DNA of 64,000 nucleotides from assembly GCA_026770705.1 (NCBI GenBank), contig JANJGN010000150.1, positions 434,001-498,000 on the forward strand. The letters run 5' to 3'. The notes beneath the pieces were generated by a model, which did no database searches, had not been told where the DNA came from, and saw nothing but the letters and a program-made list of their open reading frames with translations. The position numbers and the translations under genes were made by a program. Positions 37,001-63,185 of the stretch are shown here, in pieces. This stretch comes from Isurus oxyrinchus (Eukaryota). Every line of letters begins with the position of its first letter. The first letter of the stretch is position 1.

Positions 37001-39705
37001 CCTGGTTGAGCACCATTTCCTGATTTATTTTTACGCCAGACAGAAATGGATAATTGTTGTAGCAAATGCTTCAGCCTTATCTTTTGCCCTGATGTGCTGG
37101 GCTCCCCCTTCATTGAGGATGGGGATATTTGTGGATTCCCCTCCTCCAGTGAGCTAATTGTCCGTTACCATTGGATACGAGCATTAGTGGACTGTATTAG
37201 ACCATTATCGAAAATGAAAGCCGGACTCCAGTATGGCCTCACTATGATGGATATGACAACTCGATTTCCAGAGACCATCCCTTTAGGAACAATTACAGCT
37301 AAAGTAGTAATAGGGAAGTTAACCCAATTTTTTACCCATTATGGATTACTGCTGGAGATCCAGTCAGATCAAGGTTCCATCTCTATGTCTTAAAATTTTC
37401 TGAACATAATGAGTAATTTGGGTATAAAACAGTTAAAGTCCACAGCATATCATCCATAGACACAGGGATCTTTAGAGAGGGACCAACAAACACTCAAAAC
37501 AATGATTGAAGCTATTGTCATGAACTCCCCATGACTGGGACAAAGGACTGGATTTTCTTGTATTTCCCACACGAGATTCACCAACTGAATCGGCAGGTTT
37601 TAGTCTTTTTGGAATAACTTATGGACACGAGATAAGAGGCTGTCTGAAATACATCAAAGAAAGATATTCCGGACAGAGGGATGAATCCTCTATTTCAGAT
37701 GATGTGTCCATGTTTCAGGAACGGCTCATAGGAGCCTCCAAAGTGGCACAAGAACATCTTATAGTTTCTCAAACAGAGATGAAGGAATGGGGCAGACAGG
37801 CAAGCTGTGACCCGAACATCACAACCAGGGGGATGACGTGTTAGTATCATTGCCTTGGCAGGGGGAGCCTCTGAAAGCGCGGTTCAGTGGTCCCCACAAG
37901 GTAATTAGGAGGGTTGGTCAAGTAAATTATTTGATAGACACCCCAGATTGTAGAATAAAGAATCGGCTGTGACACATCAATATGTTAAAACGATACCATC
38001 GTAGGGAGGGAGGTAAAAAGGAGCAGGTATTTCATTTCCAACCAGATTCTGCATAGATTACAGAAAGGTTAATGCAGCAATAAAACCAGATTCCTACCCA
38101 ATCCCCTGTTTAGAAGATGGTATTGACGGGGTTGGCAGTGCCATGTTCCTTACTGAGATAAATTTGTTGGTAGTGGGGGGTGTTCGTGACCATCAGTGTG
38201 GAAGGGTTAGGTTTACAGGTTACACAGACCACACACGCACCAACAGACACACACACACATGNNNNNNNNNNNNNNNNNNNNNNNNNNNNNNNNNNNNNNN
38301 NNNNNNNNNNNNNNNNNNNNNNNNNNNNNNNNNNNNNNNNNNNNNNNNNNNNNNNNNNNNNNNNNNNNNNNNNNNNNNNNNNNNNNNNNNNNNNNNNNNN
38401 NNNNNNNNNNNNNNNNNNNNNNNCATGCACANNNNNNNNNNNNNNNNNNNNNNNNNNNNNNNNNNNNNNNNNNNNNNNNNNNNNNNNNNNNNNNNNNNNN
38501 NNNNNNNNNNNNNNNNNNNNNNNNNNNNNNNNNNNNNNNNNNNNNNNNNNNNNNNNNNNNNNNNNNNNNNNNNNNNNNNNNNNNNNNNNNNNNNNNNNNN
38601 NNNNNNNNNNNNNNNNNNNNNNNNNNNNNNNNNNNNNNNNNNNNNNNNNNNNNNNNNNNNNNNNNNNNNNNNNNNNNNNNNNNNNNNNNNNNNNNNNNNN
38701 NNNNNNNNNNNNNNNNNNNNNNNNNTCAGTGCTGCACTGGAGTCTCGGTGTCAGCTCCGATTCTGTGCTGAAGGAAGGTAAACTCCAGATCAACAAGACC
38801 CTGAATTGGATGAGCAAAATCCTTAACAGAGAATTGTAGATTTACCCCTCAGTGCTCCATCGATTAAATATAATTCATTACAAAAACAGAATTACCTGGA
38901 AAAACTCAGCAAGTCTGGCAGCATCGGCGGAGAAGAAAAGAGTTGACGTTTCGAGTCTTCATGACCCTTCGACAGAACTTTAGTTCTGTCGAAGGGTCAT
39001 GAAGACTCGAAACGTCAACTCTTTTCTTCTCCGCCGATGCTGCCAGACCTGCTGAGTTTTTCCAGGTAATTCTGTTTTTGTTTTGGATTTCCAGCATCCG
39101 CAGTTCTCTTTGTTTTTATCTCTGTGTTTAATATAATTCATTGCCTGTCAAGCCCTTGGGGACATCCTGAGGATGTGAAAGGGAGTTTCTTTAAATCTGG
39201 ATGGGCAGGGTCTCTGGTGGGAGAATGCTCCTGCAGTGTGACAGTTTACATAGGCAGTGCCCATTGTAAATGTGACATAGGAACTTATCTTGAGGGAAGG
39301 TGCCTAGAAATGCACACAGGCATCAGATACAGAGACATGATGCATGGAGTCTTGCTGTGCACAGTGCTTGCTCACATTAAACACTTGATTTGTTCTTAGA
39401 TGCACCACAGAATCTCTCAATTACTTCTCTTGATATGATTAACGCTTCATGGATCAATATAATTGAGGGGAATTCTGCAGAGATAATCTGCTCTGTCGAG
39501 AGCTTCCCAGCTTCTAACCTGACGTGGCAACATCTTAATGTCCCAATGAACAGAACAAGTTCCAACAATGAGCTGTGGTTGGTGATTCCTCACGTTACAT
39601 CCAGGGACACTGGAGACTATCAGTGTGTGGCAGAGAATGAACATGGAGCAGTGGAGGGATTCATAACCATCACTGTGGAATGTGAGTTAATGCAAACTTC
39701 AACAG

Positions 39706-39769
<64 letters not shown>

Positions 39770-42700
39770 CACACACAAACACAGATACACGCACACGTGT
39801 CAGCTCCCTCTCCTGTCTCAGTGCTGCACTCGAGTCTCGGTAGCAGCTCTGATTCTGTGTTGAAGGAAGGTAAACTCCAGATCATCAAGACACTGAATTG
39901 GATGGAGCAACCTCCTGAACAGTGAATTGTAGGTTTATCACCCAATACCCCATTATTCCAAAGCAATTCCTCCATGGTGAAATCTCCGTGAACATCCTGA
40001 TCATGTGATTTTCCTCTAGCCCAAAAGTGTCTCCTCTGGTGGAAGGCTGTAATTACAGCGTGACAGTTTACATATCCACACGCAGCAAGAGCTGAACAAC
40101 ACTCAGCTTGGGCTGAGAAATGACAAGTAATGTTCACATCACACAAGGACCAGGCAGTGATCATCTCCAACAAGAGAGAATCTAACCATCTCCCCTTGAT
40201 ATTCAATCACTTTCACATCGCTGAATCCCCCACAATCCACATCCTGGGGAATGTTAACCAAACAACTAACTGGACCGGCCATAAATACTGTGGCTACAGG
40301 AGCCGGTCAGAGGCTGGGAATTCTGTGGGGGTGAAAAACTCACCACCACCTCCTCAAGGGCAATTAGGGATGGGTAATAAATGCTGGTCTAGATAGATAC
40401 AGCCACTTCCCATGAATATGCAAAAAGGAACACACTGGCAGTGAATGTTACAAATGGTGACAGAGAAAATTATAATGGAGAAAGAAGCCTTGACATGCAC
40501 ATAGACACCAGATGGAGAGAGATAATACCTGGAGTCTTGCTGTGCACTGTGTTTGCTCACAATGAAACCTTTATTTGTATTTAGATGCACCACGGAACCC
40601 ATCAATTACTTCTCTTGATATGATTAACGCTTCATCGATCAACATAATTGAGGGGAATTCTGCAGTGATAATCTGCTCTGTCGAGAGCTTCCCAGCTTCT
40701 AACCTGACGTGGCGACATCTTAATGTCCCAATGAACAGAACAAGTTCCAACAATGAGCTGTGGTTGGTGATTCCTCACGTTACATCCAGGGACACTGGAG
40801 ACTATCAGTGTGTGGCAGAGAATGAACATGGAGCAGTGGAGGGGTTCATAACCATCACTGTGGAACGTGAGTGTGGAGATACATTTGTTTGTTTGTTGTC
40901 TCCGTGGTCTCCGTGGAGCCATTGGGATCGTGTTGTTTTTAATCCAGTTTTCTTCAATCCTCGCTCAGTCCACATTATCCACACACCCAATTTTTCCTCT
41001 CCCTTTCTGTTTTTGGTCTCAGTTTCTCCTTCAATGGTTGTGAGGACAAGGCTGTCAGGTCTTCGTTTCCAATCTCCGTACTTGATGAACTTTCTCTCTC
41101 TAACTGTCCTGAACAACCCTTTTAATTGCTGAACGTCTCCTCTTGATCTCAGCCACTCATTGGTCTTTCTGTCCATCCAGCTGATTCTGAGCATCTGGCA
41201 GCATCTGTGGAGAGAAAGACAGGGTTAGCGTTTGGAGTCCGTAAGACTCCTCTTCAGAGCTAAAGGGAAGTAGACATGTGGTGAAATATATCCTGTCTAA
41301 GGCGGGGCGATGGGACAGGTGGAGCTGGATAGAAAACCAGCGATAGGTGGAGGCAATGGAGAGATTGTGGAAGATGTCATAAACAAAAGGTCAATGGGTT
41401 GTTAACAGTGGTGGTATTGGATAAAGGAGGTGCTAATGGTGACATTAAGCAGAGTGTGATAATGGGCGGACCAGGGTAAGCACTCTGGAAAGAGACAGAT
41501 GGCCCTCGTGGGGGTGTGGCAGGGGGAGGGGACGGTGGAGGGAATAAAGATCGAAAATAGACTAAAATCTGCGGTTTAACACAATCAATAAAATGGAAAT
41601 GAATTTCAAATAATAATAATAAAAATAAGTGGAAAACAGTCAACAAATAAAACAATTAAAATGAATATATAAAAAAGGGTTCAAAAAGCAGTGAAGATCG
41701 AGGAGAGAGTTCATGATCTGAAAGTGTTGAACTCAATATTCAGTCGGGAAGGCTGTAAAGTGCCAGGTCGGAAGATGAGGTGCTGTTCCTCCAGTTTGCG
41801 TTGGGCTTCACTGGAACAATGCAGCAGGCCAAGGACGGACATGTGGGCATGAGAGCAGGGTGGGGTGTTAAAATGGCAAGCGACAGGGAGGTCTGGGTCA
41901 TGCTTGTGGACAGACCGAAGGTGTTCATCAGAGCGATCACCCAGTCTGTGTTTGGTGTCTCCAATGTAGAGGAGACCACATTGGGAGCAGTGAATGCAGT
42001 AGATTAAATTGAAGGAAGTCTGCATGAAGCGCTGCTTCACCTGGAAGGAGTGTTTGGGTCATTGGACAGTGAGGGGGGAGGAAGTAAAGGGGCAGGTGTT
42101 GCACCTTCTGTAAATACATGGGAAGATGTCATCGGAGAGGGTTGAGGTGCTAGGGGTGATGGAGGAGTGGACCAGGGTGTCCTCGAGGGAATGATCCCTG
42201 TGGAATGCCAATGGGGTGGGGGTGGGGGGGGGGCGGATGTGGTGAAGGGAAGATGTGTTTGGTGGTGGCATCATGCTGGAGTTGGCGGAAATGGCGGAGA
42301 ATGATCCTTTGAATGAGGAGGCTGGTGGGGTGAAAAGTGAAGACAGGAGGGACCCTTACATTGCTCTGGGAGGAAGAGGAATTTGCAAGGGGGGATGCGC
42401 GGGAGATACACAATCTCCAACTCTTTCTCAACCATTAAGATGCTCCTTAAAACCATTAAGACACACCGTTAAAACCTCCTGCTTTCAGCGAGCTTTTGCT
42501 CACCTTTCCTAATATCTCCTAATGTGACTCAGGGTCAGATTTTGTCCGAAGGAGGTGAGAAATGATGGAGGGAATTCCAGAGGTTAGGGTCCAGGCAGCT
42601 TAAGGCACGGCCGCCAATGGTGGAGAGATGGGAATGGGAGAATGTCCAAGAGTTCAGAATTGGAGGAGCGCAGAGATTTCGGAGAGCTGTGGGGTGTGGG

Positions 42701-45700
42701 GATTACCTGCTGATTGTTCTCTGTCTTTGTTCCAGATCCCCCACAGGAGACGATGGTGTCCATCAGCAGATCCTCAGGTGGGATAAGAGAGGGAAGCAAT
42801 ATCACATTAACCTGCTCCAGTGAAAGTGTCCCACCGATATCTCATTACACCTGGTTCAGGATCGAGGGGAACACCAGCACCCAGTTAAATACAAGTAGCC
42901 GCACTCTCTCCTTCACTCCTGTAACACGGGAGAATGATGCAGGTTTCTACTGCACAGCGAGGAACCCAATGGGTAACAGCATCTCCAACATCACCCACCT
43001 GAACGTACAATGTAAGCATTTTACTCCCCCTGTCTCTGCTTAAAACTCAAACACTTTCTGTCTGAGGGCAGCTTCCTTGCTGTGGTTTAGCATAACTAGC
43101 ATCACCTCCCTGCTTTTTTCACCCTGCGCCTCTCCGAGATACATAAGGAGATATCAGAACAGGGACTGAAAGTTCAGAGAAAGAGGCCAGATTTTAAGGA
43201 GTGTCTGAAATGAGGAGAGAGATAGACATGGAGAGGTTTACGGTGGGAATTCTAGAGCTCGGGGCCCAGGCAGCTGAAGGCACGGCCGCCAATGGTGGAG
43301 CGATAGGAATCGGGGGATGGTCAAGAGGCCGGAATTGGAGGAACACAGAGATCTCGGAGGGTTGTAGAGGCTGGAGGAGGTTACAGAGATAGGGAGGGTT
43401 GTGATGGCTGGAGGAGGTTACAGAGATAGGGAGGGTTGTAGGGGCTGGAGGAGGTAACAGAGATAGGGAGGGTTGTAGATGCTGGAGGAGGTAACAGAGA
43501 TAGGGAGGTGTGTAGGGGCTGGAGGAGGTTACAGAGATAGGGAGGGTTGTGGGGTCTGGAGGAGGTTACAGAGATAGGGAGGGTTGAAGGGGCTGGAGGA
43601 GGTTACAGAGATAGGGAGGGTTGTAGATGCTGGAGGAGGTAACAGAGATAGGGAGGGAGTAAGGAGGAATTTGAAACGATGTAAATTTTAAAATTGTGGC
43701 ATTGTCGGACCGGGAGCCAGTGTAGCTCAGTGACCAACAGGGAGTGATGTGTGAACGGGACTCGGTGTGAGTTAGGACATGGGGACAGCAGAGTTTGGGA
43801 TGAGCTGATGTTTCCGGAGAGTGGAAGATGGGAGGTCGGGCAGGAGAGTGTTGGGATAGTCGAGTGCGGAGGTAACAAAGGCGGGAATGAGTGTTTCAGT
43901 GTTAAGATTCTATCTTACGCTCTAACTTTGCTATGAAGTTGTCTCATTGTTGTCCTTCCCTCCTCAGATAAGCCGGAGATTTCCCAGCAGTCGGAGTGCA
44001 CTCGGAGGTCAGAGGGGGTCACCTGCGTCTGTGTGGCCAACTCCAACCCACCCGGAGACCTCACCTGGCACCTGCCCAGTGCCAAAATCAGTGGTAACCA
44101 AACACACGGAGGTTTTGTGTCGTGGCAGGTCAGAGATGGGCATCTGGTGACTGGTTCCCTCACCCTGATGAGACCCCAGGATGAGGGGGGAGTGATGGCA
44201 TCCTGCTCGGTTCAAAACCCACACGGGGAAGCCATGTTCAAGATGTATCTGTGGGTCAAAGGTGAGAGACTCGCTCAGGATCGATCTCCACTCAGCTGGA
44301 TTGATCCCTAAACTCGAGAATTCCCTCCCTCAACCTCTCCACCTCTCTCTCTACCTCCTCTAAGATGCTCTTTACAATTGACCCCTTTGACCAAGCTTTG
44401 AATCGCCTGACCTCATGTGACAATGGCAACTCTTGGTCAAATTGGAGCCAGGCCGTTCAGTGGGTGATGTCAGGAAGCACTTCTTCACACAAAGGGGAGT
44501 GGAAATCTGGAACCCTCTCCCCCAGATAAGCTGCTTCATTGGGTGCAAGACAGAAAGCTTTGACAAAATGTCCTTTCTCAGCAATACTCAGGTTCTCCTC
44601 CCAAACGATAAAATATTTTATATAAACATTTCATAGATTACATTGATAAATATTATATATAAATGTTACATAGATTACATTGATAAATATTATATATAAA
44701 TGTTACATAGATTACATTGATAAATATTATATATAAATGTTACATAGATTACGTTGAGAAACGCAACAGCTGATTTGTGCAGAGCAAGATCCCACAAACA
44801 ACAGTGTGAAGATGAGGTGATAAATGATTATTTTAGTCATGTTAGTTGATACATATATATAGAAATTAAAGATATAATTACACATTTAGTGAGGGAAACC
44901 TGTCCATTTTAACAGGTCTGGGTGTATATGTGACTCCAGTCTCAAACACCAACATGGTTAACTCTTACCTGCCCTCTGAACTGGTCTCCCAGTTTGGGAC
45001 AAACCAGTGGTTCAGGAGGAAGACCCCCCACCACCTTCTCAAGGGAAACTAGGGATGGACAATAAATGTCAGCATTGCCCGAGAATGAGTATTTAAACAC
45101 TGAGTGAGTGTATCGCTTCTCGAGATACATCGGAGCATCATTGTAAACCTGTAGTGCAGTAATTAATGGCTGTTTTTACAGGTAGAGACTCCAGTAAATG
45201 GACAGTAGGATTGTTCACGGCTGGGATCATGTTGAGTGTTTTCCTGGCTGGAATCTTCATCTTCATCTGTGTGAGAAAGTAAGTCTGAAGATTTAACTTG
45301 ATTTTAATATAAACATTTGTTTAGGATTAATTGGACAGTTTTTACAAAGGGCCAGCACAGGCACGATGGGCTGAGTGGCTTCCTCCTGAGCTGTGAGATT
45401 TTAAATTCTTTCATCGAATGTGACTGTCACTGGCGTGGCCAATACTAATTGCCCATTCCCTAATTGCCCCTTGAGAATGAGGTAGTGAGATGCCTTCTTG
45501 ACCCGCTGCAGTCCATGTGGTGTAGGTACACCCACAGTGCTGTTAGAGAGGGAGTTCCAGGAGTTTGACCCAGCGACAGTGAAGGAACGGTGATATATTT
45601 CCAAGTCAGGATGGTGAGTGACTTGGAGGGGAACTTCCAGGTGGTGGTGTTCCCATGTGTCTGCTGCCCTTGTCCTTCTAGATGGTAGAGGTCGTGGGTT

Positions 45701-48700
45701 TGGAAGGTGCTGTTGAAGGAGCCTTGCTGAGTTGCCGCAGTGCATCTTGTAGATGGTACACACACTGCTGCCACTGTGTGTTCATGGTGGAGGGAGTAAA
45801 TGTTTAATGTGGTGGATGGGGTGTCGATCAATCGGGCTGCTTTGTCCTGGATGGTGTCAAGCTTCTTGATTCTGTGCTTTGTGCAGAAGTGATTGAAAGT
45901 GACAGTCCAGTCGTTGGTGTAAGGTTACAGTGGGCTCTGTGTCTGTGCTGCACTGACTCTCTGCTATATGATAACCACAGTGTGATATTGTGTTATTTCA
46001 GGAGAAAGACAGCGATGGAGGAGAGAGTTTCGGGGACCAGTGACATTGCATTGACCCCCAGTCCACTCTCTGTGAAGCACCAGGTACAGGAGCTGTTTAC
46101 ACTCACTCCAAAGCTTCAATCTCAGTGTGTAGACAACACATGTCCCAGATTGCCAGCCCTGTTACCCACTGATTTGTACCTGTGGAGTCAGCAATGGTTC
46201 AGTATCATGCTGTCTCTCTGTTATGACACAGCAACTGGTAAAGGCTGTTGTTTAAAATCCCAGAGGGAAACTTTAAACAACTGTCATAAACTATATTTCC
46301 CAGTGGAATGTTTGAGATGCATCTCTAAATTCAGGAATAAGACCACCAGTTCTCGAGATGGGTTTATATCAAACTAAATGAGACATATATTAATTTACAC
46401 AAGTTAAACATATGCACATGGCTACAAACTAGTATTATCATAACTTTTTAACAAATTCTCAAACTAATCTCCTCTAAGACAACCCATAGTCTTTAAGCAG
46501 ATTCCAGGCATTTTCACCTCTCAAATTCCAGTCTCTCTCTCTATCTCAACCTCCCTTTCTTTCTCTCTCTTTCTCTCTCTCTCATCCTCTCTCTGATTAC
46601 AAGGTGCACGTTAATGAGCTTCACACCAGAAACTTGAGTGAAGAATCCAAGCCGTCACTCACCAGAGCCATTACCGAGGGAGTGCGAGACTGACAGCGGG
46701 TCAGTACTGAGGGAGTGCGAGACTGACAGAGGGTCACTATTGAGGAAGTGCTGCACTGTTGGAGGGTCAGTCCTGAGGGAGCACTGCACTGCCATAGGTG
46801 GTTTCTTTCATAAGACATGGGAGAGAGAGTTAAACCCACTGAGACACGACTGACATTAACGAAGCTGCACAATAATTTAACCCTATCAGTGCCAGTAAAT
46901 AATGTGAGGATGTCTTCTGTTTCCATTTCTCTGTAGGGTAAACAGAACGTGCTGATTACTGAGCCCCGGAACACAACCAGAGACACAACTAGCGAGGGGG
47001 AGACCCCAGCTCCCCGGGGTCCCTCTGAAGGTGCAGTGGGAGGCGATGCTGGACTTGGGAACCCCGGCAAACCTGAAGAGTTTCTCTACGCCAATCCCCA
47101 AGTTTTGAGGGTGTCCAGTGGTGATGGGTCTGTCCACAGGGAAGAGGAGACGGAATACGCACAGATCAGGTTTGAGCATAACTGAATGAGAAATGGGGAG
47201 TGGGAGTGAGGAAATGTGGGTGTGCGGGTAGGGATTGAGATTCCTGGGAACAGGAAACAACCCACTGGGGGAGAGGGGGAGAGAGGGAGGAAGGGATGGA
47301 ATTGGGCTACGGTTGGTGTGGTTTGGAATGAAATGCTTCTCCAGAGAGGACTGGATGCTGAGCCATTGGGGAGTGAGATTCACTGTCTCTCTCTCTTTCT
47401 CTCTCTCTCTTCCTCTCTGTCTCTCTCTTTCTTTCTGTGTCTGTCTCTCATTCTCTATCTCCAGCTCCTCCTTTAAGATGCCCGTTAATAACTGACTTTG
47501 TTGACTCAGCAGTTGGTCTCCTGTCCCTAATATCTCCTCATGTGCCTCAGAGTCAGGTGAAATGTGACTAACAATCCCCGGATGAGCCTTGGGACATTTT
47601 GCTACATTGAAGGTGCTATATAAATGCAAGTTGTTGCAGTAACTCTGATCTGCTTCGATTAACAATGGAACCACAGAGGTTCCTTCGACAGGGCGTGTGT
47701 GCAGCAGGGTCACAATAAATACATTGAGCTGTGAGGTTTTTAATTCTTACATCGAATGTGGCTGTCACTGGTGATGTCCGCATTGATGCCAATCTCTAAC
47801 TGCCCTTGAGAAGGTGGTGGTGAGCTGCCTTCTTCACCCGCTGCAGTCCATGTGGTGTAGGTACACCCACAGTGCTGTTAGAGAGGGAATTCCAGGATGT
47901 TAACCCAGCGACAGTGAAGGAACGGTGATATATTTCCAAGTCAGGATGGTGAGTGACTTGGAGGGGAACTTCCAGGTGGTGGTGTTCCCATGTGTCTGCT
48001 GTCCTTGTCCTTCTGGATGGTAGAGGTCGCGTATTTGGAAGGTGCTGTTGAAGGAGCCTTGCTGAGTTGCTGCAGTGCATCTTGTAGATGGTACACACAC
48101 TGCTGCCACTGTGTGTTCATGGTGGAGGGAGTGAATGTTTAATGTGGTGGATGTGGTATGGATCAATCGGGCTGCTTTGTCCTGGATGGTGTCGAGCGTC
48201 TTGATTCTGTGCTTTGTGCAGAAGTGATTTAAAGAGAGAGTCCAGTCATTGGTGTAAGGTTACAGTGGGCTCTGTGTCTGTGCTGCACTGACTCTCTGCT
48301 ATATGATAACCACAGTGTGATATTTTGTTATTGCAGGAGAAAGACAGCGATGGAGGAGAGAGTTTCAGGGACCAGTGACATTGCATTGACCCCCAGTCCA
48401 CTCTCTGTGAAGCACCAGGTACAGGAGCTGTTTACACTCACTCCAAAGCTTCAATCTCAGTGTGTAGACAACATATGTCCCAGATTCCCAGCCCAGTTAC
48501 CCACTGATTTGTACCTGTGGGGTCAGCAATGGTTCAGTATCATGCTGTCTCTCTGTTATGACACAGCAACTGGTAAAGGCTGTTGCTTAAAATCCCAGAG
48601 GGAAACTTTAAACAGCTGTCGTAACCTATATTTCCCAGTGGAATGTTTGAGATGCAGCTCTAAATTCAGGAATAAGACCACCAGTTCTCAAGATGATTTT

Positions 48701-50366
48701 ATATCAATCTAAATGAGACATTTATTAATTTTCACAAGTTAAACATATGCACATGGCTACAAACTAGTATTATCATAACTTTATAACAAATTCTCAAACT
48801 AATCTCCTCCAAGACAACCCATAGACTTTAAGCAGACACTAGGCAAAGCATTTTCACCTCACAAATTCCAAATGAGGTTCCTTTCACTTTGGTTCCTTTG
48901 CAGACAGGTGAAGTATTACAGCTGCTTTGATGTTACAAGCCTCTGCTCTGCACACACAAAACTGCTCAAGTTATACCCAGCTCTTGAGTGTGAAGAAGAT
49001 GGAGATTGATGGGCTCTTGATTGGTCAGGGGATCAATGGTTAGGAGAGAAGGTGGGAGAATGGGGTTTGTGAAACATATCACCCATGTATGAATGGTGGA
49101 GCAGACTCGATGGACCGAATGGTCTAATTTCTCATCCTATGTCTTATGGTCTTATGGCTTCTGTTTGAAGGTAAATTCGCAATGTATCATCAGGACCTTT
49201 GAACTCCATCTCTTCCAATAATAAATCCCCTTTCATCGTATCAATTTTATTAGTAATATAAACGTTGATTGGTTTAAGATTTCACTCTCAGACTTTGAAT
49301 GTTTTATTTAAAAATGCAAATTACCACTTTACCTCTTTGTTTGCATCTCAAAACTACTATACATCAAAGCACACAGACTGGCTGTCTTTAATCCAATTTA
49401 AATACACACAGACACACACACAGACTAAACCTCTGTTTAAAAAGACAGTTTGCATTTATAATACAAACATTAATAGATTAATAACACTCTGTCTCTGTCC
49501 CTTCATCTCTATCTCTCTCTCTCATCCTCTCTCTCTGATTACAAGGTTCATGTTATTGAGCCTCACACCAGGCACCTGAGTGCAGAATCCAAGCCGTCAC
49601 TCACCAGAGCCATTACCGAGGGAGTGCGGGACTGACAGCGGGTCAGTACTGAAGGAGTGCTGCACTGTCGGAGGGTCAGTACTGAGGGAGTGCTGCACTG
49701 TCAGAGGGTCAGTACTGAGGGAGTGCTGCACTGTTGGAGGGTCAGTACTGAGGGAGTGCTGCACTGACAGAGGGTCAGTACTAAGGGAGCGCTGTATTGT
49801 CGGAGGGTCAGCACTGAGGGAGTGCTGCACTGTTGGAGGGTCAGTACTGAGGGAGTGCTGCACTGACAGAGGGTCAGTACTGAGGGAGTGCTGCACTGTC
49901 GATGGGTCAGTACTGAGGGAGCGCTGTATTGTCGGAGGGTCAGCACTGAGGGAGTGCTGCACTGTTGGAGGGTCAGTACTGAGGGAGTGCTGCACTGCCA
50001 TAGGTGGTGCCTTTTATCCGATAGGAGACAGAGAATTAAACAAGTCTGCACAATAATTTAACCCTATCAGTGCCAGTAATTGATGTGAGGATGTCTTCTG
50101 TTTCCATTTCTCTGTAGGGTAAACAGAACGTGCTGATTACTGAGCCCCGGGACACAACCAGAGACACAACTAGTGAGGGGGAGACCCCAGCTCCCCGGGA
50201 TCTCTCTGAAGGTCCAGTAGGAGGCGATGTTGGACATGGGAATCCTGACAAACCCGACGAGATTCTCTACGCCAACATCAACTTTTCAAAGCTGCCCAGC
50301 GGTGACAGGACTGTGCACAGGAGCGAGGACACGGAATACGCACAGATCAGGTTCCAGAAAAACTGA
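24975..50366 (+). CDS. Gene B: putative inhibitory Siglec-like receptor with 7 Ig domains (V-V-C2x5), TM, ITIM+ITSM; 881 aa with either cytoplasmic cassette
   Basis: join(24975..25014,29433..29810,33154..33522,34335..34631,39400..39681,40585..40866,42736..43011,43968..44261,45182..45278, then 46002..46083+46937..47185 or 48337..48418+50118..50366). Phases are all compatible and the total is 2646 nt with no internal stop. Confidence 0.82.
26500..28400 (-). mobile_element. Degenerate Gypsy-type LTR retrotransposon 5' part (LTR, PBS-like site, gag)
   Basis: gag-like MSTKFPSLNWDVADRLSEFRMFKQRTELWF (27363-27578), a Cys/His knuckle-like remnant near 26900-27000, and minus-strand ...CAACA-TGGTGATCAGCGG near 28190. 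Confidence 0.6.
29433..29810 (+). CDS. Gene B V-set exon V3 (essential Arg replaced by Thr)
   Basis: 378 nt open. DAGPYFFTIKF with ACG at 29747-29749. Longer, basic C-C' loop KMRSYIRNKWSKWST. Confidence 0.9.
30030..31000 (+). mobile_element. L2-like LINE reverse transcriptase fragment
   Basis: RPISSLSFPSKVLER...ETAPIKV...LVLLDLSAAFDTLDH...DPQLYL...LQLNIGKTE. Confidence 0.88.
31055..32192. repeat. 37-bp minisatellite at the L2 3' end (CCCTCCCTATCTC(AGGA/TGTA)xCCTCCTCCAGTCCCTACAA)
   Basis: Period of 37 counted (31091 to 31128); homogeneous to ~31400, then degenerate. Confidence 0.9.
32270..33040 (-). mobile_element. CR1-like LINE 3' fragment
   Basis: FPLVGESRTR...FKTEMRRNF; QRDLGVLVHESQK; GMLAFIAKG. 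Confidence 0.88.
33154..33522 (+). CDS. Gene B V-set exon V4 (essential Arg present, extra Cys)
   Basis: 369 nt open; DAGPYFFRIE; extra TGT at 33252-33254 (YPSCLEN). Confidence 0.93.
34335..34631 (+). CDS. Gene B C2-set exon (CD33-type)
   Basis: 297 nt, AG/GTAAGT; paralog of 11156-11452. Confidence 0.92.
35010..37060 (-). mobile_element. CR1-like LINE, degenerate ORF2 3' portion
   Basis: ORFs 35403-35684 (KANGMLAFIARG) and 36567-37016 (KSFYKYVKR...AEELNIYFGSVFT). Confidence 0.88.
37180..38200 (+). mobile_element. Gypsy-type integrase fragment
   Basis: LTMMDMTTRFPETIPL...FFTHYGL...IQSDQGS (DDE core); downstream AYHP, RFSGP and HINMLK remnants. Confidence 0.82.
38262..38725. other. N-run (masked or unresolved), following a (CA)n tract
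   Basis: Ns seen directly; similar runs at 56842-57028, 57246-57464 and 61045-61313. Confidence 0.95.
38880..39129. mobile_element. Short Penelope-derived insertion forming a 100-bp-arm inverted repeat, with a 13-bp TSD
   Basis: 38880-38979 is the reverse complement of 38982-39081 with one mismatch. AATATAATTCATT occurs at 38867-38879 and 39130-39142. Confidence 0.85.
39400..39681 (+). CDS. Gene B Ig (C2/I-type) exon
   Basis: APQNLSI...IEGNSAEIICSVESFPASNLTW...DTGDYQCVAENEHG; 282 nt, AG/GTGAGT. Confidence 0.92.
40585..40866 (+). CDS. Gene B Ig exon, tandem duplicate of 39400-39681
   Basis: 282 nt, AG/GTGAGT; only about 5 amino acid differences. Confidence 0.9.
40900..41190 (-). mobile_element. 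RTE-clade LINE 3' fragment
   Basis: MLRISWMDRKTNEWL...RERK..YG...IEG is typical of the RTE RT C-terminus. Confidence 0.65.
41190..42405 (-). mobile_element. Penelope-like element 3' portion with GIY-YIG endonuclease
   Basis: ORF 41711-42040 NLIYCIHCSQCGLLYIGDTKHRLGDRSDEH...VACHFN...RKLEEQHLIF...LNIE; upstream RVPPVFTFHP; terminal hammerhead-like remnant at 41225-41260. Confidence 0.88.
42736..43011 (+). CDS. Gene B C2-set exon (CD22-like)
   Basis: PPQETMVSI...IREGSNITLTCSSESVPPISHYTWF...DAGFYCTARNPMG; 276 nt, AG/GTAAGC. Confidence 0.92.
43130..43900 (-). mobile_element. L2-like 3' fragments with an internal 37-bp minisatellite (~43360-43660)
   Basis: Reverse complement of the 31055-32192 unit; ELHWLPVRQ...FKI motif. 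Confidence 0.75.
43968..44261 (+). CDS. Gene B membrane-proximal Ig exon (MAG domain-5-like)
   Basis: KPEISQQSECTRRSEGVTCVCVANSNPP...VTGSLTL...CSVQNPHG has the S-x-C...C-x-C...SNP pattern of the last Ig domain of MAG and CD33-related Siglecs; 294 nt. Confidence 0.9.
44632..44757. repeat. 37-bp AT-rich tandem repeat (~3.4 copies)
   Basis: CATAGATTACATTGATAAATATTATATATAAATGTTA. Confidence 0.9.
45182..45278 (+). CDS. Gene B transmembrane exon (RDSSKWTVGLFTAGIMLSVFLAGIFIFICVRK), uncharged
   Basis: TTTTTACAG acceptor, phase 1; AA|GTAAGT donor, phase 2. Confidence 0.9.
45400..45870 (-). mobile_element. LINE 3' fragment (same family as 50561-52660), duplicated at 47735-48205
   Basis: Reverse complement of the 52230-52620 region. 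Confidence 0.8.
46002..46083 (+). CDS. Gene B cytoplasmic exon 1a (RKTAMEERVSGTSDIALTPSPLSVKHQ)
   Basis: Phase 2 in, phase 0 out; AG/GT. Confidence 0.82.
46937..47185 (+). CDS. Gene B terminal exon 2a: degenerate ITIM (FLYANP) plus ITSM (TEYAQI)
   Basis: CTGTAG acceptor, 249 nt to TGA; AATAAA at 47714-47719. Confidence 0.82.
   Translation, partial: GKQNVLITEPRNTTRDTTSEGETPAPRGPSEGAVGGDAGLGNPGKPEEFLYANPQVLRVSSGDGSVHREEETEYAQIRFEHN
48337..48418 (+). CDS. Gene B cytoplasmic exon 1b (duplicate of 1a)
   Basis: Identical peptide, AG/GT intact. Confidence 0.8.
48554..49487 (-). mobile_element. Solo-LTR-like element (TGTTATGAC...AATAACA); truncated copy at ~46220-46530
   Basis: TG...CA ends; reverse-oriented relative of 50658-51619 and 57492-58667. 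Confidence 0.6.
49615..49998. repeat. 33-bp satellite array in reverse orientation
   Basis: TCAGTACTGAGGGAGTGCTGCACTG units; a shorter paralogous array lies at ~46675-46790. Confidence 0.92.
50118..50366 (+). CDS. Gene B terminal exon 2b: canonical ITIM (ILYANI) plus ITSM (TEYAQI)
   Basis: DEILYANINF...DTEYAQIRF matches the ELHYASLNF...TEYSEVR pattern of CD33-related Siglecs. Confidence 0.9.
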   Translation, partial: GKQNVLITEPRDTTRDTTSEGETPAPRDLSEGPVGGDVGHGNPDKPDEILYANINFSKLPSGDRTVHRSEDTEYAQIRFQKN

Positions 50367-50560
50367 GTGTGAAACAGGGAGCGGGGCTGTGGGGTGTGTG
50401 CAGCCAACATGGCCAAATAGTAATGAACAGAAATATGATGTTGCTCAACTTTTTTTTATTAGTTCTGAGTGAGCTTTCTGAATGCTGCACCTTTTTCCAT
50501 GCTGTAAAAGATTGTGAGAAGCTTATGAATTATGTATAATGTTACATCTGTTAATACAAG

Positions 50561-52660
50561 GTGAGGTGAGAGTGACTGCCTTTGACATCAAGGCTGCATT
50601 TGACCGAGTGTGGCATCTAGGAGCCCGAGTAAAACTGGAGTCAATGGGAATCAGGGGTGGTACGAAAGTATAATAATTTGCTTAATATTTTCCTGGTTTG
50701 TTGTAAACTAGGTTTATGGGTGTGAGTGTAGATGGGTCTGTCTGTGTGGTTTAATTACATCTGGAGTCAGGTAGACTGCAAGTTTGAGATTATCAAAAGA
50801 AGCTAGATGTAGAAATGTACTTGAAATGCTAATGAGAACACATGGAGGCTGACTTAGCATGTAAGGTGTGAGGGGAATTTGCATTTTTAGATAAGTGACG
50901 GGATTGTTTGGATTTCAAAGGGCTGTTGGTCTGTTTACAACGAGGCCGATATGCAAGGCAAAGGAGTGTGTTTATTTTTCCCAAAGGTTATTGACAACAT
51001 TGGCAACATGAAAGTTTTTATATTATGGGAAATGTATCATTCCAAAGACATATGGAACAATGAAATTTACATATCAAAGAGAGAGGAACATAAACAAAGG
51101 AGAATGAAAGGCTATTTTGGGGACCATGTAAAATCTAACAAGAGTGTGTGAATCAGCCTTGAAGAAGCCTCCAGGCATTTCTCCATAGGTCTGTTATGTT
51201 CAGTGACTATAGATTGAGAAAGCCATTTGGAATTCCACTCTCAAGTGTGTTCTGTGTTAACTTGCTGGTTTTGTTTTTAAATCTAAAATCTATTTTGGAC
51301 TGTTGCCTTAAATGGGGTTGTACTACTCATCTCCAGACTTCCCAATGCCTGTCCACCATCTTTAAGGTTAATTAGGAAGTTTAGGATTTGTTATAGTAGT
51401 AACCGTATCCTTATGTGTGTGCTTGAAATCTTGTATTTTGTTAATAAATATTGAAATTTAATTTTTAAGATCTCTAAATGTCTTGGTTGACACATTACTC
51501 CTGAATTCAGTGCACACATCTCATAATAAATACAAATTGCAAAACCGTTGTAATAGTGTGACCAAGTTTCCCTTGTGGATTTTGTCCCCCTGGCACACAT
51601 CATCTACCACATCATAACAGAGGGAAAACTCTCCACTGGTTGGAGCCATACCCAGCACAAAGGAAGATAGTTGTGGATGTTGGAGGTCAATCATCTCAGT
51701 TCCAAGACTTCACTGCAGGAGTTACTCAGAGTAGTGTCCTCGGCCCAACCATCTTCAGCTGCTTCATCAATGACCTTCCTTCCATCATAAGGACAGAAGT
51801 GTGGATGTTCACTGATGATTGCACAATGTTCAGCACCGTTCACGGCTCCTCAGATACTGAAACAGTCCTTGTCCAAATGCAGCAAGACCTGGACAATATC
51901 CAGGCTTGCGCTGACAAGTGTCAGGCAATGACCATCTCCAATAAGAGAGAATCTAACCATCGCCCTTTAATGTTCAATGGCATTACCATTGCTGAATCCC
52001 CCACTATCAACATCCTGGGGATTACCATTGACCAGAAACTGAACTGGACTAGCCATATAAACACTGTGGCTACAAGAGCAGATCAGTGTCTGGGAATCAT
52101 GCAGTGAGTAACTCACTCCAGACTCCCCAAAGCCTGTCCACCACCTTCAAGGCACAGGTCAGGAGTGTGATGGAAGACTCTCCACTTGCCTGGATGAGTG
52201 CAGCTCCAACAAGATTCAGTAAACTCAACACCACTCAGGACAAAGCAGCCCCGCTAGATCCACTCTCTGCACAACCGACACACAGTAGCAGCAGTGTGTA
52301 CCATCTACAAGGTGCACTGCAGGAACTCACCAAGACTCCTTAGGCAGCACCTTCAAACACACAACCACTACCATCTCGAATTACAGGGCAGCAGATACAT
52401 GGTAACAGCACCACCTGGAAGTTACCCTCAGAGTCACTCACCCCCATCCTGACTTGGAAATATACGGCCGTTCCTGCACTGTCACTGGGTCCAAATCCTG
52501 CAATTCCCTCCCTAACAGCACTGTGGGTGTACCTACCCCACATGGACTGCAACAGTTCAAGACGGCAGCTCACTACCACATTCTCAAGGGCTATTAGAGA
52601 TGGGCAATAATTCTGGCCTAGACAGCGCCACCCACATCCCATAAATGAATATAAAAAACA
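50561..52660 (+). mobile_element. 5'-truncated CR1-group (L2/Crack-like) LINE in the gene B 3' region, interrupted by a solo LTR
   Basis: DIKAAFDRVWH at the 5' end; GVTQSSVLGPTIFSCFINDL, FTDDCT, ILGITIDQKLNW. Confidence 0.85.
50658..51619 (+). mobile_element. Solo-LTR-like element nested in the LINE
   Basis: TG...CATAACA ends; LINE sequence resumes colinearly (GGAATCAGGGG | GAGGGAAAACTCTCC); contains AATAAA. Confidence 0.7.
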
Positions 52661-54209
52661 AGCAATTAAAATGCTCAGACATTTCTGTACATTGTTTTTC
52701 AAATGTGAATACCATTCTCTGGTGAATAATTCCATTCTCAAGGCACCATTTCCTGTTATCACATGCCCTTTTCATTATTTACAATCATGTACCTTCATTT
52801 GTAATGTAACATTCCCATGTAAACATGTCACACTGTAGTTACACCCTCCTGCCAGTGGCGATGCTCTAGTGTCATAGTTTTACCTCTCAGAGGCTGGAGG
52901 AAATATGCCCACTGTGTTTACAATATTAGAAACACTCAGGGGTGACCAGGGGATTCTTTAGGTCATGTTTACGATGTTGTTAAGATACAAGGGGCCAGTG
53001 GGATTTTTCCTACTGCGTTTACAATGTTGTTAAGACAGGATTCGGGTGAAAGATGACCTTCAACCCATCATCCCTCTCATGCCGCGAGGGAACAATAGCC
53101 TTAAGTCAGGGCCTGGCAGTTTGTGGGAACAGTCCCTGTGCCTGATTGGATAGGCTCAAAGTGAACCCAATGTTGGGTCTTGAGCCTCAAGATCCTGGAA
53201 CAGGCACAGAGTGGACACCTCGGATGGATGTCAAAAACCCCATGGACACTTTTTGGGTGAAGTGTAGGGGGTGGGTATGGAGTCGGGTGGGGCAGTTATC
53301 CCCAGTGTCCTGGGACCAATATTTATCCCTAAACCAACATCATTAAAAAAAAACAGATGTTCTGGGTCTGTATCTCACTGCTGTTTGTGGGATCCTGCTG
53401 TGCAGAAATTGTCTGCCATGTTTCCTACTGTTCCACAGCATCCACTGTTCAAAACCATTTCTCAGGGAATGAAGGACTATCTGTGAAGTGCAGATCCCCG
53501 TTGTAATGTAGGAAACACCACAGTCAATTTGCGCACAGCAAGCTCCCACAAACAGCAATGTGAGAATGAGCCAGACCATCTGTTTTTAGGGTGTTAGTTG
53601 GGGGTAAATATTGGCCCCAGGTGGAGCTCTGCAATCTGCCCCAGCAAGGGTATGAAGAATGTGCTGCCTGCTCCTCTGTCCGTTTGGAAGATTCTGGAAG
53701 GGATGAGGATGAGGAAGCGGCCAATGACAGAGCAGCTGGGGGGCGTGGCCATGTAGCCAGGGCTGCCCCTGTGTGGGGCGGGGTCATCGCCAGACGCTCC
53801 TTGTGTAAAAACAGATTCTCATAAGCTCCTCCCATCTCCCAATTGCTCTCAGCCAATCCCTGGTGAGACCCTCCCACATAAAGAAGCTCGTCCATTGTCC
53901 CCACCATGACTCAAGGGACTGCCCCTCCCCCACAGGGACTTCACCATTGATGGGAAAGCCCATGATGGGCCGAACGTTCCAGGCTCAGGTAACAGGCGGA
54001 CAGAGTTTACAGTCGGACACTCGCCTGACAAGACGACGACGTCTCCCCCGAGGCACAGGGTCTTCACCATTGACCACCCACCTCTCAAATGGGCCTTTCT
54101 GAAGGCCCCGCTTTTTATCGGTGCCTGAGGGACCCGACCCCCACCGGGCCCTCCCCTGACCCCTCACCGCTCCGGGGTCACCCAGTCGGACTGCTATTCT
54201 AGACCACAT

Positions 54210-55030
54210 CACCCCCTCCCCACCCCCACAACCAACCCCACCCCCACACCCCCACCCCCACCACCCCCCTCCCCCATACCCCCACCCCCTCCACCTCACC
54301 CACCCCCACGCCCACCACCCACACCCCACCCCCACCCCCACACCCCACCCCCACCCCCACACCCCCACGCCCACCCCCACGCCCAGCACCCACACCCTCC
54401 CCCACCACCACCCCACCAGCTCCCCCACACCCACCCCCAAACCCACCCCCTCCCCCACCCCCACCACCACCTCCAAACCCTCCCCCTCCCCCACCCTCAC
54501 CACTCCCTCCCCCACCCCCACCCCCCCCAACCCCACACCCTACCCCTCCCCAACCCCACACCCCCACCCCCACACCCACCCCCACATGCACCCCCACCAC
54601 CCCCACCACCCCCTCCCCCACCCACACCCCCAACATCCCCACCCCCACCGCACCCCCACCCCCACCACCCCCACCACCACCCCCTCCCCTGCCCCCACCC
54701 CCACCGCCCCCACCCACACCCACACCCCATCACCACCCCCACCCCCTCCCCCACCCCTACCACCTCCACCCCCACCATCACCCATGCTACCACCCCCACA
54801 ACCCCCACCCCCACCCCCACCACCCCCACCCCCACCCCCAGCCCCACCCACACTCCCACCGACACCCACATCCAGACCCCCACCCTCTTCCCCACCTCCA
54901 CCCCCACCATCCACACCCCCACCCCCACCACCATGTCCGACCAACCCACCCCCCTCCCCAACCATCCCTACCACCCCCCTCCCCCACCCCCACCACCATG
55001 ACCGACCCACCCACAGCCCCCGACCCCTGG
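54210..55030. repeat. C-rich low-complexity tract (CCCCCA-like), G-rich on the minus strand
   Basis: Seen directly; generates the poly-Pro and poly-Gly ORFs. Confidence 0.95.
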
Positions 55031-55689
55031 ACCACACATCGGAATCTGGGACTGACATGTTTAGAGGTCGAGTTGGCGGAGCCGGGAATTCTGCCGTCTC
55101 TGTGACCCCCAACCCGGGAGTGAAAATCCGTCCTTAACTTCCACTTTCTAGTGTCTGAGACAAGAGGCAATGAGTGAGTGGGCTGACGGTCAGGATTAAT
55201 GCTGTTAATCTGTGTTTGAGGGGCTGTGAATTCTCGGGGGACTAGTTACTCTCTGAGCTGCAGCTTCCAAATCCTTATTTGATGCCGTGCATGTGGGGTT
55301 GGAAGATTTTTTTTAAAACCACAGGCAGTTCACAGAAACCCACAGGAAACCCACAGAGAGACAGTCACTGAGAAACACACTCACTCCTTGTGGTTTCACC
55401 TTTTAACCACATCCTGTCTGTGTGGCTTAAATGTTAAACACACCGGCCACACTCAGGGAAGTTTCACTCTGTGAAATGCTCTCTCTCTCACACAAAAACA
55501 CACACACAGACACACACACACACACATACAGACAGACACACATACACACAGGCACACTCACACTCACACACATAGACATGCACACACACATACACAAACA
55601 AACACACTCACATTCACACACAAACACACTCACTCACACACTCACTCACACGCATGTACAAACACACACACAAAGATAATATCCCAACG

Positions 55690-59890: not shown

Positions 59891-60079
59891 TCGCATCTTT
59901 ATTATTAACGTTATTTAAAAATAGTGATCACACAAGCCTGGTTTCTAAGGAAATGAAACTGCAAACAATTTACAGTAAAGTGAAATGTACAAGAATACTC
60001 TATTTATTTTGAGCTGATGATATATAATTATACATGAGGCATGTTGTTAATTTCAAACATCAATTGAAATATGGCAGTT

Positions 60080-60375
60080 CTGACAGAGCAGCATTCCCTC
60101 AGTGCTCATCCTCTGACAGTGCAGCACTCACTCAGCACTGAGCCTCTGACAGTGCAGCACTCCCTCACTACCGACCCTCTGACAGTGCAGCCGTCCCTCA
60201 GTACTGACCCTCTGACAGTGCAGCATTCCCTCAGTACTGACCCTCCGACAGTGCAGCACTCCCTCAGTACTAACCCTCTGGGATTGCAGCACTCCCTCAA
60301 TACTGACTGTATGGGAGTGCAGCACTCCCTCAGCGCAGACCCTCCAACAGTGCAGCACTCCCTCAGCACTCCCTC
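60080..60375. repeat. 33-bp satellite array
   Basis: Same unit; preceded by a ~180-bp flank that is duplicated at 62655-62825. Confidence 0.9.
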
Positions 60376-62823: not shown

Positions 62824-63185
62824 CTGACAGTGCAGCACTCCCTCAGTACTGACCCTCCGACAGTGCAGCACTCCCTCAGGACTGACCCTCCGACAGTGCA
62901 GCACTCCCTCAGTACTTACACTCCGACAGTGCAGCACTCCCTCAGTACTGACACTCTGACAGTGCAGCACTCCCTCAGTACTGACACTCTGACAGTGCAG
63001 CACACCCTCAGTACTGACCCTCTGACAGTGCAGCACTCCCTCAGTACTGACCCTCTGACAGTGCAGCACTCCCTCAGTACTGACCCTCTGACAGTGCAGC
63101 ACTCCCTCAGTACTGACACTCTGACAGTGCAGCACTACCTCAGTACTGACCCTCCGACAGTGCAGCACTCCCTCAGTACTGACCC
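62824..63185. repeat. 33-bp satellite array
   Basis: Same unit. Confidence 0.92.

What the first reader, a model, noticed from the sequence alone, without database searches (positions are those of the whole stretch)
45388..50400. Duplicated cytoplasmic cassette offers two alternative tails: ITSM-only versus ITIM+ITSM
The two-exon cytoplasmic unit is tandemly duplicated (from ~45388 and ~47726). Both copies keep splice sites, length (82 + 249 nt) and an open frame. Exons 1a and 1b encode identical peptides, while differences in the last exon hit the proximal motif (FLYANPQV in 2a vs ILYANINF in 2b) and leave TEYAQI intact. Copy a has its own AATAAA at 47714. Inference: alternative last-exon choice could switch one ectodomain between tandem-SH2 phosphatase recruitment and ITSM-only signalling.
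Basis: partly seen in the sequence, partly recalled or inferred. Interest (0 to 1): 0.78.

Follow-up and report, generated by a model that had tools for sequence, protein, structure and literature searches.

The report
Shark Siglec with doubled signalling tail
A shark immune-receptor gene of the Siglec type carries its two tail exons twice in a row, and in its closest annotated relative the first copy is spliced in series with, or skipped in favour of, the second copy rather than ending the gene.

Summary
The two cytoplasmic exons (82 + 249 nt) of a Siglec-like receptor gene on the + strand are tandemly duplicated. Both copies have open frames and intact splice sites. Exons 1a and 1b encode identical peptides. 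Exon 2a reads FLYANP + TEYAQI; exon 2b reads ILYANI (a canonical ITIM) + TEYAQI.

It is not an assembly artefact. The great white shark ortholog (NCBI isoforms X1-X6) has the same a-then-b order.

No ortholog isoform ends at 2a's own stop.
- X1, X2 and X6 splice from a donor inside 2a (window 47169|47170, 16 nt before the stop) into exon 1b. This gives one tail with four tyrosine motifs.
- X4 and X5 skip cassette a.
- X3 joins 2a to 2b out of frame and keeps only cassette a's motifs.

1a + shortened 2a is 315 nt (105 codons), so it is a frame-neutral module.

The 2a motif is not decay. The Y-A-N/S-P type is the sole tail of many lamniform paralogs and is absent from the seven non-lamniform shark species hit.

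Splicing in the window's own species was not resolved. The scan found the same layout on two other pieces of this genome.

The parts
45182..45278 (+). Transmembrane exon of the Siglec-like gene. It ends with 2 nt of a codon; donor GT at 45279-45280.
   Evidence: tblastn of P0034 residues 555-587. In run X1 a loose end at 45279 continues with the first letters of exon 1, showing a spliced TM-to-exon-1 join.
45387..47204 (+). Duplication unit a: repeat-element part, exon 1a, intron, exon 2a, and 19 nt past the stop.
   Evidence: blastn against unit b. 45399-45781 also matches 52656-52278 in reverse at 83%, so this part is a dispersed repeat.
46002..46083 (+). Cytoplasmic exon 1a (82 nt), with no tyrosine.
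46937..47185 (+). Exon 2a (249 nt including stop 47183-47185): P-type motif FLYANP plus ITSM TEYAQI.
   Evidence: It best matches cassette a of the ortholog: 81% against 62% for 2b.
47167..47175 (+). Internal 5' splice site CAG|GTTTGA (cut 47169|47170), 16 nt before 2a's stop. With it, 1a + 2a' = 82 + 233 = 315 nt.
   Evidence: Sequence. The junction after TEYAQIR into exon 1 appears in P0034, P0017, P0032, P0033, P0031, P0018, P0038 and P0001.
47205..47724 (+). 520-nt spacer unique to copy a, with the only AATAAA after 2a (47714-47719). It is probably intronic.
   Evidence: No other copy in the window. AATAAA scan. X1 contigs 47473-47614 and 47616-47771 have depth 160 and 82, and the second runs across the AATAAA and the a/b junction.
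47725..50385 (+). Duplication unit b.
48337..48418 (+). Cytoplasmic exon 1b (82 nt), encoding the same peptide as 1a.
48871..49500 (.). 630-nt insertion present only in the intron of copy b.
49540..50034 (.). 33-nt satellite array in the intron of copy b. A shorter array lies at 46598-46861 in copy a.
   Evidence: family D1.
50118..50366 (+). Exon 2b (249 nt including the stop): canonical ITIM ILYANI plus ITSM TEYAQI. This is the true last coding exon.
   Evidence: 92.6% to cassette b of the ortholog. 90% to P0002 and P0003.
50367..51465 (+). 3' UTR after 2b. AATAAA/ATTAAA signals lie at 51443 and 51525. 50392-50564 is 80% like 21181-21349, in the upstream paralog's 3' region.
   Evidence: Contigs of X1, X5 and X6 lie on 50116-50900 (records 8, 24, 32).

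Best explanation
This is the 3' end of a lamniform-shark Siglec-like inhibitory receptor gene. Its two-exon tail cassette exists twice: cassette a is P-type (FLYANP + TEYAQI) and cassette b is I-type (ITIM ILYANI + TEYAQI).

Cassette a most likely acts as an internal, skippable module and not as an alternative gene end. A 5' splice site inside exon 2a (CAG|GTTTGA, cut 47169|47170) lies 16 nt before 2a's stop. It has the same codon phase as the TM exon's donor. So 1a + shortened 2a (315 nt, 105 codons) can be spliced in series into 1b-2b.

Three products follow:
- Inclusion gives one long tail with four tyrosines: YxN-type, ITSM, ITIM, ITSM.
- Skipping (TM-1b-2b or TM-1a-2b) gives the ancestral ITIM + ITSM tail.
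- Joining shortened 2a directly to 2b shifts the frame, stops after five codons, and leaves only cassette a's motifs.

Shown: the DNA anatomy in the window, and these exact junction products in the annotated ortholog. Inferred: that the same splicing occurs in the window's species, and that the tails differ in the SH2 partners they recruit.
For: 1. Anatomy and phases in the window.
2. The Carcharodon 'myelin-associated glycoprotein-like' protein is colinear with the window gene. Its cassette a fits 2a best (81% against 62%) and its cassette b fits 2b best (92.6% against 70.4%).
3. Its six isoforms: X1, X2 and X6 carry the series tail with the junction after TEYAQIR into exon 1b. X4 is TM-1b-2b. 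X5 is TM-1a-2b. X3 is the 2a-to-2b frameshift.
4. Series tails also appear in 4 further Carcharodon models (P0033, P0031, P0018, P0038) and 1 Cetorhinus model (P0001).
5. The P-type cassette is conserved. There are 16 distinct P-type sequences against 9 I-type, and P-type is the sole tail of many paralogs.
6. Window 2a against ortholog cassette a: 11 of 78 residues differ, 9 of them in residues 1-45 and only 2 in residues 46-78, which hold both motifs.
7. In run X1 the TM-to-exon-1 splice is seen. Contigs over 47473-47771 have depth 82-160, like intron contigs (56-582), against 2192 on the UTR after 2b.
Against: - No exon-exon joint for 1a-2a, 2a'-1b, 1a-2b or 1b-2b was listed for the window's own species. 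Tables 5 and 7 were filled by repeat joints, with 706 joints and 3333 loose ends not shown.
- Contigs laid on 2a at 90% likeness may come from P-type paralogs. All 12 X1 contigs read T at 47022, and a loose end at 47082 looks paralogous.
- The ortholog isoforms are automated Gnomon models, and I could not see their RNA support.
- The internal donor matches the MAG|GTRAGT consensus at only 6 of 9 positions, with T at +3 and +4.
- An AATAAA does exist 529 nt after 2a's stop.
- Cassette a evolves faster than cassette b between the two species (14% against 8.5% of residues).
Confidence: 0.6

Rival explanations
1. Exon 2a is an alternative last exon that ends at its own stop (47183-47185) and is polyadenylated after the AATAAA at 47714. 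It gives a tail that competes with the 2b tail.
For: 2a keeps an open frame to a stop. A single AATAAA lies 529 nt downstream. Contigs of RNA-like runs lie on 2a (records 27 and 28 of X6, and high word depth in X1).
Against: 0 of 6 ortholog isoforms end at 2a's stop. X1 contigs over 47473-47771 have intron-like depth, and record 5 runs through the AATAAA into unit b. After the internal donor, the last four codons read FEHN against the P-type FK(R/Q)N, which fits relaxed constraint, though the numbers are tiny. Contigs on 2a may come from paralogs.
Confidence: 0.12
2. Cassette a is a silent relic. Only TM-1b-2b or TM-1a-2b messages are made in meaningful amounts, and the series and frameshift isoforms in the public annotation are splicing noise or prediction artefacts.
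For: Two of six ortholog isoforms skip 2a. In run X5 word depth on 2b is 36-44 against 1.4-5 on 2a. The internal donor is weak. Cassette a diverges faster than cassette b. Another paralog in this genome was reported to carry a stop in its first cassette (scan note s1-865411, not checked here).
Against: The frame, splice sites and both motifs of cassette a are kept in two species, with only 2 of 33 motif-region residues changed. The series arrangement recurs in at least 8 gene models of two species. In X6 word depth on 2a (167) exceeds that on 2b (74). The depth comparisons are unreliable in both directions.
Confidence: 0.23
3. The duplication is an assembly artefact: a haplotype mis-join or a collapsed paralog.
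For: The locus is repeat-rich, the window has N gaps elsewhere, and several exons of the gene are duplicated.
Against: The copies differ by 6-22% and by large indels. This is far above what I would expect between alleles; that expectation is general knowledge and was not tested. The same a-then-b order, with matching type-specific residues, is in an independent assembly of another species. Contigs of independent runs bridge the a/b junction at 47724/47725: X1 record 5 (47616-47771) and X6 record 29 (47643-47812).
Confidence: 0.03

Closest known systems
CD33-related Siglecs (Siglec-5, -7, -8, -9, CD33)
   Same: V-set lectin domain with the YFFR(I/V)E arginine strand. The best solved-structure matches are Siglec-5, MAG, Siglec-7, Siglec-8 and CD33. 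C2-set domains, a single TM, and a membrane-proximal ITIM plus a distal TEY-type ITIM-like/ITSM motif. The 18-25-residue spacing typical of such pairs is recalled, not tested; here it is 23.
   Different: The whole two-exon tail unit is present twice and can be read in series. The first unit has a Pro at Y+3 in place of the ITIM's hydrophobic residue. As far as I recall, no mammalian Siglec has such a tandem tail cassette.
Siglec-10 / Siglec-G and CD22 tails (recalled, not tested here)
   Same: Tails that combine ITIM and ITIM-like motifs with an extra YxN (Grb2-type) tyrosine. CD22 has several ITIMs in a row. The four-tyrosine series tail resembles this layout.
   Different: In those receptors the motifs lie in one fixed tail, not in a duplicated, skippable exon module. 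The V-set exon matches CD22 only weakly (E 7.8e-5 against 2e-15 for Siglec-5).
CEACAM1-L/-S, PECAM-1 and L-/S-MAG tail isoforms (recalled, not tested here)
   Same: Alternative splicing of small cytoplasmic exons changes which tyrosine motifs an Ig-superfamily receptor carries. In CEACAM1 and MAG it does so by a frame change or an in-exon stop, like the X3-type 2a'-2b frameshift.
   Different: Those genes use unique exons. Here the choice is between one and two copies of a duplicated cassette, made possible by a donor site lying in the coding sequence just before the stop.
NCBI models of the great white shark ortholog (XP_041037215.1 to XP_041037221.1) and paralogs
   Same: Same exon order, same a (P-type) then b (I-type) cassettes, and same junction positions.
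   Different: It is a different species: 81% identity in 2a and 92.6% in 2b. The window gene has two copies of one C2 exon (39381, 40566) and two V exons. These are automatic annotations, and I found no paper describing them.

Membership tests
Siglec family (I-type sialic-acid lectins) | N-terminal V-set domain of the Siglec type | tested here: met
   Pfam V-set (E 5.6e-12) and Ig_CD22 (E 1.9e-9, above cutoff) on 33132-33602; likewise on 29411 and 9907. The top PDB matches are all Siglecs: Siglec-5 at 2e-15, then MAG, Siglec-7, Siglec-8, CD33, Siglec-10 and sialoadhesin.
Siglec family (I-type sialic-acid lectins) | Essential ligand-binding arginine on strand F (YFFR.E) | tested here: met
   GPYFFRIE of exon 33132 aligns on GSYFFRVE of Siglec-5. 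That this Arg is the essential one is recalled. The outer V exon (29411) reads YFFTIKF and lacks it.
Siglec family (I-type sialic-acid lectins) | Sialic-acid binding | not testable with these tools
   This needs glycan-binding assays.
Inhibitory (CD33-related type) Siglec tail | Proximal ITIM [ILVS]xYxx[ILV] plus distal ITIM-like/ITSM TxYxx[IV] | tested here: met
   Exon 2b has ILYANI and TEYAQI, 23 residues apart.
Inhibitory (CD33-related type) Siglec tail | The same pair of motifs in cassette a | tested here: not met
   Exon 2a has FLYANP, which fails the ITIM pattern at -2 and +3. Only the ITSM is kept.
   AATAAA is present. None of 6 ortholog isoforms ends there. The contig evidence is weak, and raw reads were not available.
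Cassette-exon alternative splicing | A frame-neutral module with usable splice sites, both included and skipped in transcripts | tested here: met
   82 + 233 = 315 nt, with GT at 47170 and AG before 46002, 46937 and 48337. Inclusion and skipping are both seen, but only in the ortholog's annotated isoforms, not in the window's species.

The most novel reading that the evidence does not exclude
Lamniform sharks have turned the Siglec inhibitory tail into a modular system.

A derived, conserved non-ITIM motif (Y-A-N/S-P-x-V followed by TEYAQI) and the ancestral ITIM/ITSM cassette are shuffled among paralogs as single units, P+I pairs and P+P pairs. A splice donor hidden in the codons just before the stop lets any duplicated cassette be read in series.

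Alternative splicing would then tune one lectin ectodomain between three tails: two tyrosines, four tyrosines, or P-type only. The P-type tyrosine would recruit a partner other than SHP-1/2, for example a Grb2-type SH2.
Probability: 0.3. Interest if true: 0.55.

Novelty: new variant of a known kind. Interest (0 to 1): 0.4.

Why it matters
Paired and graded inhibitory receptors are a recurring theme in vertebrate immunity, but cartilaginous-fish Siglecs are almost unstudied.

A duplicated tail cassette that is read in series or skipped would be a simple genomic way to vary inhibitory signal strength or adaptor choice on a fixed lectin head. It would also be a clear case of a terminal exon turned into an internal one by a donor pre-existing in its coding sequence.

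The lamniform-only P-type motif gives a concrete, testable question: what binds phospho-YANP?

Two things limit the value. The layout is already present in automated public annotation of a related shark. And the biology is inferred, not measured.

Tried and rejected
- Pfam on the two last-exon peptides gave 0 families.
- I ran the large HMMER search before the word search. An 82-residue query in the word search sees only proteins of 45-143 residues, so it could not find full-length receptors. I used the word search afterwards with stored full-length proteins and a tail region.
- Read laying was meant to give exon-exon joints. The repeat element (45387-45960 and 47725-48295) and the 33-nt satellite filled the joint and loose-end tables, so only indirect evidence came out.
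- dN/dS between 2a and 2b is 0.71 (NG86). I rejected it as a test of decay, because 2a and 2b belong to two old family-wide tail types, not to a recent pair.
- A simple model of unequal recombination between flanking repeat copies does not fit. The 520-nt spacer has no partner after 2b, and the third repeat copy (52278-52656) is inverted. The alternative, that cassette a came from a P-type neighbour gene, could not be tested without other loci.
- ARAGORN found no tRNA-like SINE head in 45000-51500.
- Paper searches found nothing on shark Siglec tails. For these I saw only listings and abstract starts. For PMC13262535 I saw three passages, none relevant. Supplements were not opened.
- No protein of the window's own genome appeared, so its own annotation, if any exists, was not seen.
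- I did not build, translate or search a joined (spliced) model of the window gene. Frames were worked out from exon lengths and single-exon translations, and searches were exon by exon.

Full report
**What is there.**
The region is the 3' end of a gene on the + strand. Upstream exons encode Siglec-type V-set domains and C2-set Ig domains:
- V-set exons at 29411 and 33132 match Pfam V-set and Ig_CD22.
- C2-set exons lie at 34283, 39381, 40566, 42714 and 43937.

The V exon at 33132 finds solved Siglec structures first: Siglec-5 at E 2e-15, then MAG, Siglec-7, Siglec-8 and CD33. Its GPYFFRIE aligns on the GSYFFRVE strand of Siglec-5.

The TM exon is 45182-45278. It is followed by four cytoplasmic exons: 1a (46002-46083), 2a (46937-47185), 1b (48337-48418) and 2b (50118-50366).

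**The duplication.**
Unit a (45387-47204) and unit b (47725-50385) align as follows:

| Unit a | Unit b | Identity |
|---|---|---|
| 45387-46530 | 47725-48870 | 93.65% over 1150 columns |
| 46566-46791 | 49506-49733 | 88.6% |
| 46669-47204 | 49875-50385 | 81.6%, with gaps |

- Unit b carries a 630-nt insertion and a longer 33-nt satellite.
- A 520-nt spacer (47205-47724) with no other copy in the window separates the units.
- Exons 1a and 1b differ at 1 of 82 nt and encode the same peptide.
- Exons 2a and 2b differ at 38 of 249 nt, 36 of them after nt 82. The adjacent intron differs by 3-6%.
- By pattern, 2a has FLYANP (no ITIM, but YxN) and TEYAQI (ITSM). 2b has ILYANI (ITIM) and TEYAQI. Spacing is 23 residues in both.

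**Who the relatives are.**
Pfam knows nothing in the tail exons. A full HMMER scan with the 2b peptide found 13 proteins, and the source names of ten of them were looked up. They are NCBI models of shark Siglec-like receptors from Cetorhinus maximus, Carcharodon carcharias, Stegostoma, Hemiscyllium, Scyliorhinus and Mustelus. The closest are the two lamniform species, at 90% identity.

Word searches with the tail regions of stored proteins added more.

A Carcharodon gene named 'myelin-associated glycoprotein-like' is colinear with the window gene from the V exon to the tail. Its first cassette fits window 2a best (81% against 62% for 2b). Its second cassette fits 2b best (92.6% against 70.4% for 2a). 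The a/b pair therefore predates the split of the two species and is not an assembly error. Contigs of two independent runs also bridge the a/b junction (records 5 and 29).

**How the cassettes are used in the ortholog.**
The 90% cluster of that protein holds six isoforms of one gene. Their tails are:

| Isoform | Length | Tail |
|---|---|---|
| X1, X2, X6 | 801, 794, 671 aa | TM-1a-2a-1b-2b in series. 2a is left after TEYAQIR, before its last four codons and stop. |
| X4 | 696 aa | TM-1b-2b |
| X5 | 696 aa | TM-1a-2b |
| X3 | 697 aa | 2a joined directly to 2b out of frame. It ends six residues after TEYAQI. |

None ends at 2a's own stop.

In the window the corresponding donor is CAG|GTTTGA, cut at 47169|47170. 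Exon 2a up to it is 233 nt, and 82 + 233 = 315 nt, or 105 codons. The donor leaves two bases of a codon, exactly as the TM exon's donor does, so exon 1b follows in frame. Reading 2b one base out of frame gives VNRTC and a stop (frame 1 of 2b). The X3-type product is therefore possible here too. I derived this from lengths and single-exon translations and built no joined model.

**The first motif is a type, not damage.**
I cut all cassettes from the stored proteins and aligned them. This gave 16 distinct P-type cassettes, with Y-A-N/S-P, then QV(F/L)R, SGDG, and EEETEYAQIR. It gave 9 distinct I-type cassettes, with YANINFSKLPSGDRTVHRSEDTEYAQIRFQKN-like tails.

P-type is the only tail of many Carcharodon and Cetorhinus paralogs. 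Series tails occur as P+I (the window gene's ortholog, P0033, P0031) and as P+P (P0018, P0038, P0001).

The P-type motif was found only in the two lamniform species among the 58 stored proteins. Hits from Stegostoma, Hemiscyllium, Rhincodon, both Scyliorhinus species, Mustelus and Pristiophorus have the ITIM form. In one search, only the two Carcharodon clusters among 23 hits covered the whole double-tail query.

The I-type is therefore probably ancestral and the P-type a lamniform novelty. The sharp rise in a/b divergence inside exon 2 reflects these two old types.

Between the window and Carcharodon, 2a differs at 11 of 78 residues: 9 in the first 45 and 2 in the 33 that hold both motifs. 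This fits constraint on the motifs.

**RNA evidence in hand.**
Runs are coded and kept as contigs only.

Run X1 behaves as RNA. A contig ends at the TM donor and continues with the first letters of exon 1. Exon bins carry far more word depth than intron bins.

Contigs of X1, X5 and X6 lie on both 2a and 2b. X6 record 27 enters 2a with 17 unlaid letters upstream, and X5 record 24 enters 2b with 18. Both look spliced.

The stretch between 2a and unit b is covered in X1 only by contigs of depth 82-160. These are like intron contigs, and one runs through the AATAAA.

Against over-reading this:
- Contig depth is a poor measure.
- Likeness was set at 90%.
- P-type paralogs are numerous.
- All 12 X1 contigs differ from the window at 47022.
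- No exon-exon joint of the cassettes was among the rows shown.

The splicing pattern in this species remains unproven.

**Mechanism proposed.**
Shown:
- the anatomy
- the phase-compatible internal donor
- the orthologous series, skipped and frameshift products in public models
- conservation of the P-type motif

Inferred:
- that the window gene is spliced in the same ways
- that the ITIM + ITSM pair recruits tandem-SH2 phosphatases, as in mammalian CD33-related Siglecs (established knowledge, not tested)
- that the P-type tyrosine, which keeps Asn at +2, binds something else such as a Grb2-type SH2 (my inference from the recalled pYxN rule)

**Comparison and novelty.**
By the tested features the gene is a Siglec-family member with a CD33-related-type inhibitory tail. 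The tandem, serially readable tail cassette and the P-type motif are variants I could not find described in four paper searches. In those searches I saw listings and abstract starts only, and supplements were closed.

The arrangement is, however, already visible in NCBI's automatic annotation. The scan's own notes report the same layout on two other pieces of this genome. One of the follow-ups there reached the same reading (s1-865407, s1-865411).

I rate it a new variant of a known kind, of moderate interest.

**Limits.**
- The window's own annotation was not in the databases searched.

Noticed in passing
window 50392-50564 and 21181-21349: The 3' UTR just after exon 2b is 80% identical over 174 nt to sequence downstream of the upstream paralog's short TM exon. 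The two genes therefore share an ancestral 3' end, although one has no signalling tail.
   Followed up: partly
window 39381-39700 and 40566-40880; also 18833-18982: One C2-set exon is present twice in tandem in this gene (93.7% and 87.6% to the same ortholog residues). A 50-residue piece of it, 98% identical, lies in the upstream gene region. Carcharodon and Cetorhinus models named 'hemicentin-1-like' and 'ICAM5-like' (P0003, P0020) consist of 4-5 copies of this exon.
   Followed up: partly
P0003 (Carcharodon, XP_041037176.1), tail: The ITIM tyrosine is replaced by cysteine (LLCANINF) in an otherwise I-type tail, so this paralog keeps only the ITSM.
   Followed up: no
window 1565-6139, 11591-13135, 22372-24178, 46598-46861, 49540-50034, 60068-60412, 62800-63213: A 33-nt satellite fills several kilobases of the window on both sides of the genes and gives very long stop-free frames on both strands. 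It swamped the read-laying tables.
   Followed up: no
window 43319-43725 and 44611-44795: Two separate 37-nt tandem arrays lie in the introns just upstream of the TM exon (families D2 and D7).
   Followed up: no
window 13615-16486 and 51562-52104: Stop-free frames that look to me like reverse transcriptase of LINE-type retroelements lie between the receptor genes and after the 3' UTR. This is by eye only; no family scan was run.
   Followed up: no
window 29411-29899: The outer V-set exon reads YFFTIKF where the inner one reads YFFRIE, so it lacks the lectin arginine. Carcharodon model P0033 (855 aa) has a V-V head matching both exons. This was already noted by the scan (s1-864041).
   Followed up: partly
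window 54129-55134: About 1 kb of G+C-rich, proline-codon-rich low-complexity sequence is open in several frames on both strands.
   Followed up: no
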